Below, piece by piece: positions 2,612 to 5,873 of a DNA stretch of 64,000 nucleotides. The notes under the pieces are model-generated. The model was not told the origin of the DNA. It did not search any database and saw nothing but the letters and a program-made list of their open reading frames with translations. Both the position numbers and the translations under genes were made by a program. The DNA lies in IMG/VR virus record IMGVR_UViG_3300032236_002285, positions 62,001 to 126,000 of that record. One strand, written 5' to 3'. Numbering within the stretch: position 1 is the first letter of the stretch; every line of letters starts with the position of its first letter.

Positions 2612-3967
2612 ATGGCTGATAAAAAATCTACACGAGTTAAATTTTCTGAAGAATTACATGATTTACTAAGAATCCTTGAGGATGATGGTAGTTATGTTGC
2701 TTTTGAATTACTTTGGTTAAATGAACCAGATTCAAAATATCATAATGGATTAGATGTTGAAGATGTTGATATATCCAAAACAAGATCTTGCTTAGATGTT
2801 AATATTAGAGGTAGAGTTCATCCTATGAAAATAGAAAACTTTATTAAATATTTTTTCAAAAATTATTTCCAATCAGATGTTGTTTTAGATTTTATTGAAC
2901 AATATAACATATTAGCTGGTGGTGGCGGTGAGTTACAAGATACAAGAACTAAAATTATACCAGAACCTTTTAAATATAATCCTAAAGACGTTAGAAGTAC
3001 ATTTATTTCATTAGTTACTAAAACATATCCACACGGACATGAAGAAGAAGTTATGCAGTTTATGCCTAAATTGGATAAAGATTCTGTGGGTAACTATTAT
3101 AAAATTATTGGTGAGAATCCAACAACTATGTTTACATCTCACTTAGATACTGCTGATAGAAAACAAGGAATCACTAAACTTCTTTCAATGAAAGACGAGA
3201 ATGGTGATGAAATTATCTATACTGATGGTTCTACTATCTTAGGTTCGGATGATAAAGCCGGTGTTGCTGTTATGTTATATATGATGGCTCATAATATACC
3301 GGGTCTTTATTATTTCTTTATGGGTGAAGAAAGAGGTGGTATCGGTTCAGGTTTACTTTCTTCTGTGTATGATGAAACTCCTTATCTTAAAAATATTAAA
3401 AGGTGCGTTTCATTTGATAGAAGAGATGTTAAATCGGTTATTACTTCTCAATTAGGTAGAACTTGTTGTTCTGATACATTTGGTACTGCTTTATGTAAAG
3501 AATACAATGCTCATGGTCTTAAATTATCTTTAGATCCTACGGGTATATACACAGATTCTGCTTCATTTATTGACCAGATTCCTGAGTGTACTAACATTTC
3601 TGTTGGTTATTATAATGAGCATACTGGTAAAGAAAGACAAAACATTAACTATTTAGAGAGATTAGCTAAAGCAAGTGTTTTGGTTAATTGGAATTCTCTA
3701 CCAACTGCTAGAAAGATAGGAATTGATGAGGAAGTTATCAGAAAATATGGTAGATTCATTAATGAGCTAAAGGCTACTCCAATGGGAATTGATATCAAAG
3801 TTATGGCTGAAGAAGGTGGTGGTACTGTAATTGCTTGTGATATGGAAGAGGGTTATATTGATGCAACGTATGAGTCACTGACAATGTTACAATTCTTATT
3901 AAATAAACATAAAATCAATCAAACAGTATATTTTGATGGTGATTATATAAAAATAGATTTATCATAA
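2612..3967 (+). CDS. M20/M28-family Zn peptidase-like protein (paralog 1)
   Basis: FTSHLDT, LGSDDKAG, GEERGGIGS, SFDRR, TDS and HT metal-ligand motifs. Confidence 0.8.
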   Translation: MADKKSTRVKFSEELHDLLRILEDDGSYVAFELLWLNEPDSKYHNGLDVEDVDISKTRSCLDVNIRGRVHPMKIENFIKYFFKNYFQSDVVLDFIEQYNILAGGGGELQDTRTKIIPEPFKYNPKDVRSTFISLVTKTYPHGHEEEVMQFMPKLDKDSVGNYYKIIGENPTTMFTSHLDTADRKQGITKLLSMKDENGDEIIYTDGSTILGSDDKAGVAVMLYMMAHNIPGLYYFFMGEERGGIGSGLLSSVYDETPYLKNIKRCVSFDRRDVKSVITSQLGRTCCSDTFGTALCKEYNAHGLKLSLDPTGIYTDSASFIDQIPECTNISVGYYNEHTGKERQNINYLERLAKASVLVNWNSLPTARKIGIDEEVIRKYGRFINELKATPMGIDIKVMAEEGGGTVIACDMEEGYIDATYESLTMLQFLLNKHKINQTVYFDGDYIKIDLS

Positions 3968-4404
3968 TGAAACTTAAAAAATTCAACCAGTTATTTGAAC
4001 GTGAAGGATTTGATGATATAGACCAACCTTTTGACGAAGAAGACGAATATTCAATTCCTGAAGAAGATGATTATGATCCAAGTAGTGATGATGATATGGA
4101 ACATCTTTGTTACTTATTAAGACAAATGTTTAATAATAGCAATATTGATGTTAGTGTTGAGAATAGCGGACTGGATGTATCTATAACTGCTCAGTTTGAT
4201 AGAAAAGAATCATTAAAAGATGTTATAAGACTATTTGAGATTGTTAAAAAGATTAAAAAAGATATTCTTGCTCAGTATGATTCTTCATATGAGATGTGGG
4301 AAACAAGATCTGGTAATCCTATGATTACTTTTGATTTTAATTTAGATGAAGATTCTGATAAAGATGGTGTTACTACTGGTGATAAAGATGATTATCCTTG
4401 GTAA
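3967..4404 (+). CDS. Hypothetical acidic protein with CTS-like N-terminus
   Basis: ORF overlapping the upstream stop; starts MKLKKFNQLFERE. Confidence 0.7.
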   Translation: MKLKKFNQLFEREGFDDIDQPFDEEDEYSIPEEDDYDPSSDDDMEHLCYLLRQMFNNSNIDVSVENSGLDVSITAQFDRKESLKDVIRLFEIVKKIKKDILAQYDSSYEMWETRSGNPMITFDFNLDEDSDKDGVTTGDKDDYPW

Positions 4405-4450
4405 TATTTAAATAAATTTCAAACTTTTTTCTATTTTGAAATATTATATA

Positions 4451-4458
4451 TATCTTTG
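4451..4458 (+). promoter_or_regulatory. Bacteroidota-type -7 element upstream of tmRNA
   Basis: TATCTTTG ends 18 nt before the tmRNA 5' end; no canonically spaced -33 TTTG. Confidence 0.55.
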
Positions 4459-4476
4459 TAAGATAATAACACACTT

Positions 4477-4855
4477 GGGGATGTTTTAGAATTGATTTGC
4501 GGATTAGTGGTAGTTATGCAGGTATCGGATGGTTAAGTACCCGATTAATAAATTAAGTGATAAATTTGTAAACGGCAACGTTAATGAAGTAGCAAGCAAT
4601 GAAGACTTAGTATTTGCTCTACAAAACAACATGCTCTTGGTAGAAGAGCCAGCAACTGTCTAACAGCAGTTCCTGTAGAAAAATTCTCCACCTTGTATCA
4701 CACAAGAATAAAATGGTGAAATGGGTTTTTGTTACTTATTAGAGTTTATCAAAAAAAGTAAATAGTTTGTGAGTTTAGAAAAATTTAACAAGCCTGTAAA
4801 TGAATAATTATTAATAACTGAAAAAGACACGATGGGCAGTACATCGTCATCTCCA
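4477..4855 (+). ncRNA. ssrA: tmRNA; tag ORF ~4574-4663 encodes GNVNEVASNEDLVFALQNNMLLVEEPATV
   Basis: 5' GGGGATG pairs with 3' CATCTCC including G3-U; discriminator A; T-arm cgatg-GGCAGTA-catcg; internal open tag frame; 379 nt. Confidence 0.9.
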
Positions 4856-4860
4856 CAAGT

Positions 4861-4910
4861 CCGATAGTAATATCGGTTTTTTAGACCTCACTTCCTGTGA
4901 GGTCTTTTTT
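4861..4910 (+). terminator. Two tandem terminator hairpins after the tmRNA
   Basis: ccgata-gtaa-tatcgg-tttttt and agacctcac-ttcct-gtgaggtct-ttttt. Confidence 0.8.
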
Positions 4911-5001
4911 ATTTTATGAAAATTTGAAAAAATTATATATATTTGTGTTATGAAAAATTTAAGAGATAGAGTAGATATGTAAGTAAAAATAAACTTACAT
5001 T

Positions 5002-5325
5002 ATGTCTAAACACAATAATAAATACTGGTTGAGAGAAAAGCAATACCGTTCTTTACTAAGAGAGCGTGAATCTATATGGGATGAAACCACTTGGAGATAC
5101 GGTCTTAGATCTCAACATAAAAGACTTCAAGAGATATATGAAATCTTAAAGCAAAGATTCTACGATGAAGAATATGGCTGGTATCAAACTGCGCCTAAAC
5201 ATTATCGTAAAACCTTGAACCGTATCCAAAGAGCTAAACAAAAACAAGTAATGCACAAAATTATCTCTGGTGAAGAAAACTTTGTTTTTGAGGATAGTTA
5301 TAAAGATGCTCCTTGGTACTGGTAA
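5002..5325 (+). CDS. Hypothetical basic protein ending PWYW
   Basis: 107-aa ORF; TATATTTG at 4938-4945 upstream. Confidence 0.7.
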   Translation: MSKHNNKYWLREKQYRSLLRERESIWDETTWRYGLRSQHKRLQEIYEILKQRFYDEEYGWYQTAPKHYRKTLNRIQRAKQKQVMHKIISGEENFVFEDSYKDAPWYW

Positions 5326-5354
5326 ACTTTATCCTATTCATTAATATAATAATT

Positions 5355-5873
5355 ATGATTGATAAATTTGAAGGTCGTTGGAGATTTCTTTCTAATTTCT
5401 ATGCTTGTCGTATAGAACACCAAGGTATTACATATCCTTCGGTTGAACACTTCTATGTAGCGATGAAAGTAAATGACCAACAACTAATTGATGGTAGATA
5501 TTACACACCTGGTGATTTCAGAGAAATGATTGCTAGGATTTCTAATCCAGGTTCGGTTAAAAGAATTGGCTCTAAAGTTAAGCTAAGAAGTAACTGGGAT
5601 GAAAAGAAATTAGATATTATGAATTGGGCCGTTCGTCAAAAATTCAAAGATGAATCTTTAGCTCAAATGTTATTATCTACTGATGGTCAGGAATTAATTG
5701 AAGGTACTTACTGGCATGATAAATTCTGGGGTATATGTACCTGTGCAAAGTGTTCTAATAAGGGTGAAAACCACTTAGGTAAGATTCTTATGCAAGTAAG
5801 AGAAGAATTAAAATTAGCACATCAAAAACCTTCAATAGAAGATATAATAAAAGATAAAAATAAATTAAATTAA
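5355..5873 (+). CDS. NADAR (YbiA/DUF1768) family protein
   Basis: FLSNFY, YPSVEHFYVAMK, LRSNWDE, RQKF, LIEG-YWHDKFWG and GENHLGKILMQVR; start revised from TTG 5313 to ATG 5355. Confidence 0.9.
   Translation: MIDKFEGRWRFLSNFYACRIEHQGITYPSVEHFYVAMKVNDQQLIDGRYYTPGDFREMIARISNPGSVKRIGSKVKLRSNWDEKKLDIMNWAVRQKFKDESLAQMLLSTDGQELIEGTYWHDKFWGICTCAKCSNKGENHLGKILMQVREELKLAHQKPSIEDIIKDKNKLN

What the first reader, a model, noticed from the sequence alone, without database searches (positions are those of the whole stretch)
4477..4855. Phage tmRNA with a 29-residue tag that does not end in Ala-Ala
Seen: intact alanine-identity acceptor stem (G3-U, discriminator A), T-loop GGCAGUA instead of UUCRANY, CCA not fully encoded, and tag GNVNEVASNEDLVFALQNNMLLVEEPATV. 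Known: most bacterial tags are ~10 aa and end in hydrophobic-Ala-Ala (Bacteroidota type GENNYALAA) for ClpXP/Tsp recognition. Inference: ..DLVFA looks like an ancestral tag end that has been extended by an acidic tail. This tmRNA may free ribosomes without marking products for degradation, or redirect them to another protease.
Basis: partly seen in the sequence, partly recalled or inferred. Interest (0 to 1): 0.65.

Follow-up and report, generated by a model that had tools for sequence, protein, structure and literature searches.

The report
Divergent huge-phage tmRNA, long tag
A 476-kb phage that probably infects Bacteroidota carries its own ribosome-rescue RNA (tmRNA), which the standard detectors miss because its tRNA-like elbow is rebuilt; it encodes a conserved 27-29-residue tag that never ends in Ala-Ala, and the phage also encodes the partner protein SmpB.

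Summary
Window 4477-4855 is a one-piece tmRNA gene, although ARAGORN and Rfam find nothing there.

I collected 44 distinct homologues, nearly all from large phage contigs. A full tmRNA layout holds across them. On the alignment 90% of cells pair, against 37-45% when partners are slid, and 48 of 78 pairs change on both sides. The layout has these parts:
- an acceptor stem with an invariant G3.U and a discriminator A;
- the long helix H2 and pseudoknot PK1;
- a tag frame without a start codon;
- a stop codon in a hairpin loop;
- pseudoknots PK2 and PK3, and a T arm.

The resume codon (GGC, 4574) follows UAAAY, spaced like E. coli UAGUC. Relaxed ARAGORN reads the same tag. Every tag is 27-29 residues and ends in Val or Ala, never Ala-Ala.

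The T loop is GGCAGUA-like in all 44 members and the T stem has 6 pairs. All six near-complete genomes with this RNA encode a canonical SmpB. The window's genome has no AlaRS. Contigs from RNA libraries cover only 4477-4855.

What the long tag does is untested. A degron for a protease other than ClpXP is my inference.

The parts
4451..4458 (+). Bacteroidota-type -7 promoter box TAnnTTTG (TATCTTTG), 19-26 nt upstream of the mature 5' end. It implies a short leader removed by RNase P.
   Evidence: Sequence. The same box lies 23-34 nt upstream of G1 in 29 of 44 family members. The assignment as a Bacteroidota promoter element is from established knowledge, not tested here.
4477..4483 (+). Acceptor stem, 5' strand (GGGGAUG), with G3 of the G3.U alanine-identity pair.
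   Evidence: Pairs with 4848-4854. G3.U is present in all 44 members in my alignment. A5-U changes to G5-C or G5.U. It is identical to the acceptor stem of a Prevotella host-type tmRNA.
4484..4495 (+). D-loop analogue (UUUUAGAAUUGA). It resembles the host-type UGGAUUAGAC but has a single G where canonical tmRNAs have GG.
   Evidence: Conserved core AGAAUxGA in the family. Compared with L220 and L221.
4496..4523 (+). Helix H2, 5' strand, in four segments: 4496-98, 4500-02, 4509-17, 4519-23.
   Evidence: Pairs with 4823-25, 4818-20, 4804-12 and 4792-96. 96-100% of cells are paired and several pairs change on both sides (helices 2-4).
4524..4561 (+). Pseudoknot PK1. Stem 1 is 4524-28 with 4541-45. 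Stem 2 is loop bases 4532-35 with 4558-61.
   Evidence: Stem 1 pairs in 100% of cells, with AUCGG/CCGAU, GUCGG/CCGAC and ACCGG/CCGGU variants. In stem 2 all 4 pairs change on both sides and 94% of cells pair (helices 5-6).
4569..4573 (+). Frame-setting sequence UAAAC directly upstream of the resume codon, the equivalent of E. coli U85-A86-G87-U88-C89.
   Evidence: UAAA is invariant in 44 of 44. The A four nt before the resume codon matches the A86 rule (PMC2481249). Host-type tmRNAs have UAAUU and UAGUU at the same place.
4574..4663 (+). Tag reading frame: resume codon GGC (4574-76), 29 codons, stop TAA (4661-63).
   Evidence: The frame is open for 27-29 codons in 44 of 44 members. The other two frames have stops in all 26 distinct 29-codon tags. 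Every indel inside the tag is 3 or 6 nt, while indels upstream are not multiples of 3. 28 of 44 lack any in-frame start. ARAGORN at -ps60 reads the same tag.
4633..4649 (+). Hairpin inside the tag frame (GCUCUU / AAGAGC).
   Evidence: 5 of 6 pairs change on both sides, for example GAUCUU/AAGAUC and CGGAG/CUCCG (helix 7).
4650..4675 (+). H5-like hairpin with the stop codon in its loop (4650-52 with 4673-75; 4654-58 with 4667-71).
   Evidence: Compensatory variants are visible in the re-aligned segment, such as AUUGGUU/AACCAAU and CUAUGGU/ACCAAUAG. The count on A2 is weakened by alignment gaps, with 58-72% of cells paired (helices 8-9).
4692..4719 (+). Pseudoknot PK2. Stem 1 is 4692-95 with 4703-06. 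Stem 2 is loop UCAC 4698-4701 with GUGA 4716-19.
   Evidence: Stem 2 covaries as UCGC/GCGA, UUAC/GUAA and CCAC/GUGG. About 90% of cells pair and 7 of 8 pairs change on both sides (helices 10-11).
4720..4761 (+). Pseudoknot PK3. Stem a is 4720-22 with 4744-46. Stem b is 4732-35 with 4758-61.
   Evidence: Stem b covaries (UUAC/GUAA, UUAG/CUAA, CGGAU/AUCCG). Stem a varies between AGAC/GUCU and AACC/GGUU forms (helices 12-13). It is the least well aligned part.
4770..4787 (+). Long hairpin at the position of PK4, with an AGAA loop.
   Evidence: 92% of cells pair and 5 of 7 pairs change on both sides, for example GUCCA/UGGAC and GUUAGA/UCUGAC (helix 14). A pseudoknot partner is not established.
4792..4825 (+). 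Helix H2, 3' strand.
   Evidence: See the H2 5' strand.
4829..4847 (+). T arm: 6-bp stem (4829-34 with 4842-47) and 7-nt loop GGCAGUA (4835-41).
   Evidence: 97% of cells pair and 4 of 6 pairs change on both sides (helix 15). The outermost A-U never varies, so the sixth pair is inferred from position only. Loop variants in the family: GGCAGUA 32, GGCAGUG 8, GGCAGAA 2, GGCGGUA 1, AGCAGUA 1; none is UUC. Host-type tmRNAs have a 5-bp stem and UUCGAAC or UUCAAAU.
4848..4855 (+). Acceptor stem 3' strand (CAUCUCC) and discriminator A (4855). CCA is not encoded, because CAAG follows.
   Evidence: Only 2 of 44 members encode ACCA. One RNA-library contig ends exactly at 4855 (record 15).
4861..4915 (+). 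Two tandem terminator-like hairpins with T runs (4861-4876 and 4883-4905).

Best explanation
Window 4477-4855 is a working one-piece tmRNA gene of a huge phage whose host is predicted to be a Bacteroidota bacterium.

Shown:
- It is a conserved structured RNA with the full tmRNA topology.
- Its ends form a tRNA-like domain with the alanine identity pair G3.U and discriminator A.
- It holds an internal frame of 27-29 codons with no start codon, placed four bases after a conserved A.
- A stop codon sits in a hairpin loop.
- A canonical SmpB gene is present in every near-complete genome that has this RNA.

Inferred mechanism:
1. The gene is transcribed from its own Bacteroidota-type promoter.
2. 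The transcript is trimmed by RNase P and a 3' nuclease, and CCA is added by the host or phage enzyme.
3. The host AlaRS charges it with alanine, since the phage has no AlaRS.
4. The phage SmpB and EF-Tu bring it to ribosomes stalled on broken mRNAs in the infected cell.
5. The ribosome switches to the tag frame at GGC 4574, adds Ala plus 29 residues, and terminates at TAA.

The rebuilt elbow (T loop GGCAGUA, 6-bp T stem, a single G in the D-loop analogue) probably co-evolved with the phage SmpB.

The tag always ends in Val or Ala after a non-polar stretch, so it most likely still acts as a C-terminal degron. It would be read by a protease other than the ClpX/LAA route. Candidates are the phage's own ClpC-like ATPase with ClpP, or host Lon or Tsp.
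For: - Homologues: 44 distinct sequences, from IMG/VR contigs up to 483 kb and from LR745206 and LR756502.
- Structure count on alignment A2: 90.2% of cells paired against 37-45% with slid partners; 48 of 78 pairs changed on both sides against 15-25 slid and 30.8 +/- 2.5 shuffled (0 of 500 shuffles reach it); covariation 0.297 against at most 0.103.
- G3.U and discriminator A are invariant.
- UAAA is invariant before the resume codon, matching the A86 ruler.
- Tag frame: open in 44 of 44; indels in multiples of three; no start codon in 28 of 44.
- Relaxed ARAGORN picks the same tag.
- SmpB is present in 6 of 6 near-complete genomes and is canonical, including the C-terminal tail.
- There is no other tmRNA in three whole genomes, and no AlaRS.
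- The acceptor stem and the first two tag codons (GGC AAC) are identical to a Prevotella host-type tmRNA.
- Contigs from four metatranscriptome runs of four studies map only to 4477-4855, with ends at 4477 and 4855.
- The phage encodes ClpP and a 710-residue Clp ATPase with a VGF motif.
Against: - No standard detector accepts it.
- The T loop lacks the UUC motif found in canonical tmRNAs, and nothing here shows that such a molecule is aminoacylated, binds SmpB or EF-Tu, or enters the ribosome.
- Codon-level selection on the tag is only weakly visible: pN/pS is 0.64 in frame against 0.74 out of frame. RNA structure constrains the same bases.
- The RNA-library evidence comes from assembled contigs of relatives. 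DNA carry-over is not excluded, and the uncovered flanks may simply be less conserved.
- The degron role and the protease are pure inference. ClpP is missing from one of the six genomes.
Confidence: 0.8

Rival explanations
1. It is a rescue-only tmRNA. The RNA frees stalled ribosomes, but the long tag is not a degradation signal. Tagged products persist or are routed elsewhere, for example to aggregation, membrane targeting or a phage-specific binding partner.
For: No tag ends in Ala-Ala. The most conserved part of the peptide is internal (E-D-L-V-x-A-L-Q-N-N), not the C-terminus. In E. coli, ribosome release rather than the tag function is what matters for phage growth (PMC2481249).
Against: All 44 tags end in Val or Ala after non-polar residues, as expected of a C-terminal degron. 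The long Mycoplasma tag, the nearest precedent, is an efficient Lon degron (PMC8403727). Internal conservation may reflect RNA constraints, because third codon positions are also invariant there.
Confidence: 0.15
2. It is a decoy. The RNA mainly competes with the host tmRNA for host factors and so blocks host trans-translation, as reported for the CDS-less tmRNA-like RNA of mycobacteriophage DS6A.
For: There is a precedent cited in PMC11915505. The deviant elbow could make it a poor substrate for later steps.
Against: Unlike DS6A, it keeps a complete frame-setting sequence, tag frame, stop codon and pseudoknots under selection. The phage also supplies its own SmpB, which a decoy would not need.
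Confidence: 0.04
3. It is an ordinary small gene. A 44-codon ORF from ATG 4529 to TAA 4663 would be translated from a structured mRNA, and the pairing of the ends would be incidental.
For: The window has an in-frame ATG at 4529.
Against: Only 4 of 44 members have an in-frame ATG, and 28 have no start codon of any common kind. Indels between that ATG and GGC shift the frame. The ATG lies inside the PK1 loop. The acceptor stem, T arm and H2 covary.
Confidence: 0.01

Closest known systems
Bacteroidota one-piece tmRNA (ssrA; Rfam RF00023). Examples fetched here: L220 1501-1901 (Prevotella MAG) and L221 1501-1869 (Chitinophagales MAG).
   Same: - The order of parts matches: acceptor, D-loop analogue, H2, PK1, frame-setting U-A-R-N-N, tag, stop in a hairpin, pseudoknots, T arm.
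- The acceptor stem is identical to the Prevotella one (GGGGAUG/CAUCUCC) and the discriminator is A.
- The tag starts with the same GGC AAC codons.
- The length is similar (379 nt against 369-401 nt).
   Different: - The T loop is GGCAGUA instead of UUCGAAC or UUCAAAU.
- The T stem has 6 pairs instead of 5.
- The D-loop analogue has one G instead of GG.
- The tag is 27-29 residues ending in Val or Ala, instead of 9 residues ending in Ala-Ala.
- GC content is about 30%.
- It scores below every detector's threshold.
Mycoplasma / Mesoplasma tmRNA with a long (27-residue) tag read by Lon
   Same: The tag is long, does not end in Ala-Ala and is hydrophobic near the end. This is a documented case of a tag that evolved towards another protease (PMC8403727).
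   Different: That tmRNA is cellular and has a canonical tRNA-like domain that standard tools detect. Its switch goes with loss of ClpXP in the host lineage. Here the carrier is a phage with no Lon gene of its own. The host is presumably a Bacteroidota bacterium with a normal set of proteases.
tmRNAs and SmpB reported in huge phages (Al-Shayeb et al. 2020, PMC7162821)
   Same: The setting is the same: huge phages of the Mahaphage clade predicted to infect Bacteroidetes, carrying translation genes that include SmpB. LR745206 and LR756502 carry this RNA.
   Different: That study called tmRNAs with ARAGORN only. ARAGORN finds nothing at this locus in those two records, and RF00023 finds no tmRNA anywhere in them. 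This family was therefore most probably not among those reported.
CDS-less tmRNA-like RNA of mycobacteriophage DS6A
   Same: It is a phage-encoded tmRNA relative (PMC11915505).
   Different: DS6A lacks a tag frame and is reported to inhibit host tmRNA. This family keeps a complete tag frame and comes with its own SmpB.

Membership tests
tmRNA (functional class: transfer-messenger RNA) | The 5' and 3' ends pair into a 7-bp acceptor stem with G3.U70 and discriminator A73 (alanine identity). | tested here: met
   4477-4483 with 4848-4854, and A at 4855. G3.U is present in 44 of 44 members. Position 5 covaries.
tmRNA (functional class: transfer-messenger RNA) | T arm next to the 3' acceptor strand, carrying the T-psi-C loop consensus UUCRANY. 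| tested here: not met
   The stem is present and covaries (helix 15). The loop is GGCAGUA-like in 44 of 44 members and the stem has 6 pairs. Only the C at loop position 3 matches the consensus.
tmRNA (functional class: transfer-messenger RNA) | A long-range helix H2 closes the mRNA-like and pseudoknot domain. | tested here: met
   Four segments, 96-100% of cells paired, with changes on both sides (helices 2-4).
tmRNA (functional class: transfer-messenger RNA) | Pseudoknot PK1 lies just upstream of the tag frame. | tested here: met
   Both stems covary (helices 5-6). The 3' strand ends 12 nt before the resume codon.
tmRNA (functional class: transfer-messenger RNA) | An internal frame without a start codon. 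The resume codon is set four bases after a conserved A (U-A-R-N-N). | tested here: met
   UAAAY is invariant. 28 of 44 members lack any start. Indels occur in threes.
tmRNA (functional class: transfer-messenger RNA) | The tag stop codon lies in or next to hairpin H5. | tested here: met
   TAA 4661-63 lies in the loop of 4654-58 with 4667-71, with compensatory variants. The count on A2 is weaker because of gaps.
tmRNA (functional class: transfer-messenger RNA) | The tag ends in hydrophobic-Ala-Ala (ClpXP/SspB type). | tested here: not met
   0 of 44 tags end in Ala-Ala. All end in Val or Ala. This is typical of most tmRNAs rather than strictly defining (Mycoplasma exception).
tmRNA (functional class: transfer-messenger RNA) | Pseudoknots downstream of the tag (PK2-PK4). 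| tested here: inconclusive
   PK2 is clear and PK3 is supported. The PK4 position holds a covarying hairpin with no proven pseudoknot partner.
tmRNA (functional class: transfer-messenger RNA) | The partner protein SmpB is encoded in the same genome or by the host. | tested here: met
   SmpB over the Pfam and NCBIfam cut-offs in 6 of 6 near-complete genomes.
tmRNA (functional class: transfer-messenger RNA) | Alanylation, SmpB and EF-Tu binding, and trans-translation activity. | not testable with these tools
   These need biochemistry.
tmRNA (functional class: transfer-messenger RNA) | It accumulates as a stable RNA with processed ends. | tested here: inconclusive
   RNA-library contigs of relatives cover 4477-4855 only, with ends at 4477 and 4855. 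Contigs cannot prove the ends, and DNA carry-over is possible.
Rfam RF00023 (tmRNA covariance model) and the ARAGORN tmRNA model | A score at or above the gathering threshold, or a default ARAGORN call. | tested here: not met
   No hit at gathering score or at E<=10. The whole-genome search gives only sub-threshold hits to tRNA genes. ARAGORN is silent down to -ps80. I therefore do not file it under RF00023 as now modelled. It is a divergent branch of the tmRNA class.

The most novel reading that the evidence does not exclude
The phage may carry a private, orthogonal trans-translation and proteolysis module. In this reading, the rebuilt elbow means the tmRNA is served only by the phage SmpB and is invisible to host SmpB, to host T-loop modification enzymes and to host nucleases. 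Its long conserved tag would be read by the phage's own ClpC-like ATPase and ClpP. During infection the phage, not the host, would then decide which stalled products are destroyed.
Probability: 0.15. Interest if true: 0.85.

Novelty: new variant of a known kind. Interest (0 to 1): 0.62.

Why it matters
- Detection gap. The two standard routes for finding tmRNA (ARAGORN and the Rfam models) miss a whole clade found in the largest known phages. Surveys and the tmRNA database, which rest on those tools, probably under-count phage trans-translation.
- Natural experiment on the tRNA-like domain. The T-psi-C loop, otherwise almost universal, is replaced by GGCAGUA, while the alanine identity, the frame-setting sequence and a canonical SmpB are kept. 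This tests directly which elbow contacts trans-translation really needs.
- A second long-tag lineage. After the Mollicutes, this is another lineage with a long tag that does not end in Ala-Ala. Here it sits on a virus that also carries Clp genes, which makes tag-protease co-evolution testable with simple reporter assays.

Tried and rejected
- Standard detectors. Default ARAGORN, ARAGORN at -ps95 and -ps80, Rfam at gathering score, Rfam at E<=10 and a whole-genome RF00023 search gave no tmRNA. At -ps60 ARAGORN returns a wrong "permuted" gene model, but with the same tag. I use this only as agreement on the resume codon.
- 44-codon ORF from ATG 4529. Rejected because the start and the upstream frame are not conserved.
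- All-against-all column-pair helix finder. It was too noisy in this AT-rich, G.U-tolerant alignment. I built the helices by hand from re-aligned segments and then counted them.
- A UUUUUG/CAAAAA helix in the PK3 region. Dropped because it crosses the covarying stem b.
- PK4. I could not show a pseudoknot, only a hairpin.
- Nei-Gojobori comparison of frames. It gave only a weak coding signal (0.64 against 0.74), so I rest the frame on stops, indel lengths and the frame-setting sequence.
- Genome-contig scan with the T-arm/acceptor pattern. Only one hit is a homologue, a 3.6-kb contig binned with a Peribacteria MAG that is probably a mis-binned phage piece. Presence in bacterial chromosomes is therefore neither shown nor fully excluded.
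- Full-length covariance model. Not built, because the length exceeds the calibration limit.
- Not used: the big protein searches, the structure predictions and complex prediction. I make no claim that the tag binds a named protein.

Full report
**What is at the coordinates.**
Window 4405-5001 is an ORF-free gap between two genes on the + strand.
- GGGGATG (4477-4483) pairs with CATCTCC (4848-4854), including a G3.U pair.
- A at 4855 is the discriminator. CAAG follows it, so CCA is not encoded.
- The T arm is ACGATG / GGCAGTA / CATCGT (4829-4847).
- The frame from GGC 4574 runs 29 codons to TAA 4661-4663.
- A Bacteroidota-type -7 box, TATCTTTG, lies at 4451-4458.
- Two terminator-like hairpins follow, at 4861-4876 and 4883-4905.

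ARAGORN finds no tRNA or tmRNA in the window. Rfam finds nothing at gathering score in the window. Rfam also finds no tmRNA at E<=10 in the local region.

**Where the window comes from.**
The window is bases 62001-126000 of a 476,236-bp IMG/VR virus record, estimated 97% complete. The intergenic region matches two uncultured phage genomes, LR745206 (634,780 bp) and LR756502 (642,428 bp), at 77% and 74% identity. Al-Shayeb et al. (PMC7162821) say that their genomes of more than 634 kb cluster in the "Mahaphage" clade and are predicted to replicate in Bacteroidetes. These two records match that size class. I infer, but have not verified, that they are among those genomes.

**A family, not a single case.**
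Two pattern scans of IMG/VR, filtered by BLAST and by end-pairing, gave 62 loci with full-length copies. These collapse to 44 distinct sequences of 360-384 nt, including the window and the two GenBank genomes. One more copy lies on a 3.6-kb contig binned with a Peribacteria MAG. The other 119 rows returned by the genome scan are chance matches.

**Structure.**
From re-aligned segments I derived a structure with the canonical order of a one-piece tmRNA, with coordinates:
- acceptor stem;
- D-loop analogue;
- helix H2 in four segments;
- pseudoknot PK1;
- a single-stranded frame-setting stretch;
- the tag frame, with an internal hairpin;
- an H5-like hairpin with the stop codon in its loop;
- pseudoknots PK2 and PK3;
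- a long hairpin at the PK4 position;
- the H2 3' strand, the T arm and the acceptor 3' strand.

Counted on the tool's own alignment A2, the result is as follows:

| Measure | Observed | Partners slid 1-3 columns | Shuffled |
|---|---|---|---|
| Cells forming standard pairs | 90.2% | 37-45% | 82.7% |
| Pairs (of 78) changed on both sides | 48 | 15-25 | 30.8 +/- 2.5 (0 of 500 reach 48) |
| Covariation score | 0.297 | at most 0.103 | 0.167 |

The few non-pairs in the acceptor stem in that table come from five rows whose 5' ends MAFFT shifted. In my alignment all 44 have G3.U. The weakest parts are H5 and PK3 stem a, where indels blur the columns.

**The tag frame and its start.**
Four lines of evidence fix the frame.
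- The frame is open for 27-29 codons in all 44 sequences (29 codons in 33, 28 in 2, 27 in 9). It ends in TAA in 42 and TAG in 2. The other two frames contain stops in all 26 distinct 29-codon tags.
- All indels inside the frame are 3 or 6 nt, whereas indels just upstream are single bases.
- In 28 of 44 members there is no ATG, GTG or TTG between the nearest upstream in-frame stop and the conserved GG[CA] codon. Ordinary initiation therefore cannot explain the frame. The window's ATG at 4529 is one of only four ATGs and sits in the PK1 loop.
- The five bases before the frame are UAAAY, with UAAA invariant. In E. coli the equivalent is UAGUC, and A86, four bases before the resume codon, sets the frame (PMC2481249). 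The two host-type Bacteroidota tmRNAs fetched here have UAAUU and UAGUU before their ARAGORN-called resume codons.

**What is unusual.**
- T loop. It is GGCAGUA (32), GGCAGUG (8), GGCAGAA (2), GGCGGUA (1) or AGCAGUA (1), and never UUC. Only the C at loop position 3 matches the canonical loop.
- T stem. It has six pairs where host-type tmRNAs have five. The acceptor and T stack would then be 13 pairs. The sixth, outermost A-U pair never varies, so it is inferred from position only.
- D-loop analogue. It has AGA where canonical tmRNAs have GG.
- Tags. They are three times the usual length. None ends in Ala-Ala and all end in Val or Ala.
- CCA. It is encoded in only 2 of 44 members.

By contrast, the acceptor stem is identical to that of a Prevotella tmRNA, and the tag starts with the same two codons, GGC AAC. 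This suggests, but does not prove, descent from a Bacteroidota ssrA gene.

**Partners.**
- The genome encodes a 148-residue SmpB. It scores over the Pfam and NCBIfam cut-offs and is alignable over nearly its whole length, C-terminal tail included, to solved bacterial SmpB structures.
- The five other near-complete genomes with this RNA all have SmpB too.
- No canonical tmRNA exists elsewhere in the window's genome, LR745206 or LR756502. This RNA is the only candidate partner for those SmpB genes.
- There is no AlaRS gene. The invariant G3.U fits charging by the host enzyme.
- The genome also has a ClpP homologue that scores far better against cellular ClpP models than against ClpP-related head-maturation protease models.
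- It has a 710-residue two-ring Clp/Hsp100 ATPase with a UVR motif and a VGF tripeptide at 556-558. As I recall, VGF is the ClpP-docking loop of ClpC; I did not test this.
- There is no Lon gene. ClpP is found in 5 of the 6 genomes.

**Expression.**
Twenty-two metatranscriptome runs from 17 studies, mostly freshwater and river samples, hold parts of the stretch. I laid four runs from four studies on window 4300-5050. Their contigs are relatives at 80-99% likeness and fall only between 4477 and 4855. One piece starts exactly at 4477 and another ends exactly at 4855. Nothing lies on the flanking genes. This fits an abundant stable RNA with the predicted ends. It is not proof, for three reasons: these are assembled contigs, DNA carry-over is possible, and the flanks may be too diverged to map.

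**Mechanism and rivals.**
The best-supported reading is a working tmRNA that acts with the phage SmpB. It would rescue ribosomes in the infected cell and add Ala plus 27-29 residues.

What the tag does is open. The uniformly non-polar Val or Ala ending argues for a degron. The nearest precedent for a long tag that does not end in Ala-Ala, in Mycoplasma, is a Lon degron (PMC8403727).

Three rivals remain. A decoy role like phage DS6A (PMC11915505) is unlikely, because a complete tag apparatus and a dedicated SmpB are kept. An ordinary small ORF is excluded for practical purposes.

**Known or new.**
tmRNA and SmpB in huge phages are known, and so are long tags in Mollicutes. Three things appear to be new:
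- a phage-borne clade that escapes ARAGORN and RF00023;
- a replaced T loop and a 6-bp T stem;
- a conserved 27-29-residue tag.

The huge-phage survey and the current tmRNA database both start from ARAGORN or Rfam hits, so this clade was most probably overlooked. I could not check the database itself. I rate it a new variant of a known kind.

Noticed in passing
G000:C1:221075-221205 (outside the window; locus L090): A 131-nt tRNA-like gene lies between tRNA genes. It has a normal acceptor stem (GGGGATG/CATCCCC, no G3.U), D arm and T arm (TTCGAAT), but about 70 nt where the anticodon arm should be. It is the best sub-threshold RF00023 hit in the genome (31 bits), and ARAGORN does not call it. 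It could be an intron-bearing tRNA or another tRNA-derived RNA.
   Followed up: partly
G000:C1:218721-272289 (outside the window): ARAGORN tRNA genes, mostly in clusters. Many are 84-88 nt long for isotypes that are normally about 75 nt (Lys, Glu, Asn, Ile, Thr, Met, Gln). Two have odd anticodon loops, called '(acat)' at 257917-257989 and '(gt)' at 271550-271621. These could be introns, insertions or frameshift-suppressor-like tRNAs.
   Followed up: no
G000:C1:284643-286775 (L219 244-2376) and G000:C1:440754-441512 (L093 1399-2157, - strand): The phage encodes a ClpC/ClpA-like two-ring AAA+ ATPase (710 aa, UVR motif, VGF tripeptide) and a cellular-type ClpP (252 aa). ClpP homologues, often 2-3 copies, occur in 5 of 6 related huge-phage genomes.
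   Followed up: partly
window 5313-5873 (+): The second gene downstream of the tmRNA encodes a NADAR-domain protein (Pfam PF08719, E 3e-27). The immediate neighbours (3967-4404, 5002-5325, 2612-3967) have no Pfam match.
   Followed up: no
L040 613-936 and 1961-2833 (next to the SmpB gene): A thioredoxin-like ORF (WCGPC motif) lies two genes upstream of SmpB. A 290-aa ORF follows SmpB directly. The tRNA cluster begins about 6 kb downstream of SmpB.
   Followed up: no
window 4861-4905: Two tandem terminator-like hairpins follow the tmRNA 3' end. The first (4861-4876) is conserved only in the closest relatives.
   Followed up: no
L141 231-596 (CAZKEK010000113.1): A copy of this tmRNA family sits on a 3.6-kb contig binned into a Candidatus Peribacteria MAG. 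It is most likely a mis-binned phage fragment rather than a CPR gene.
   Followed up: no
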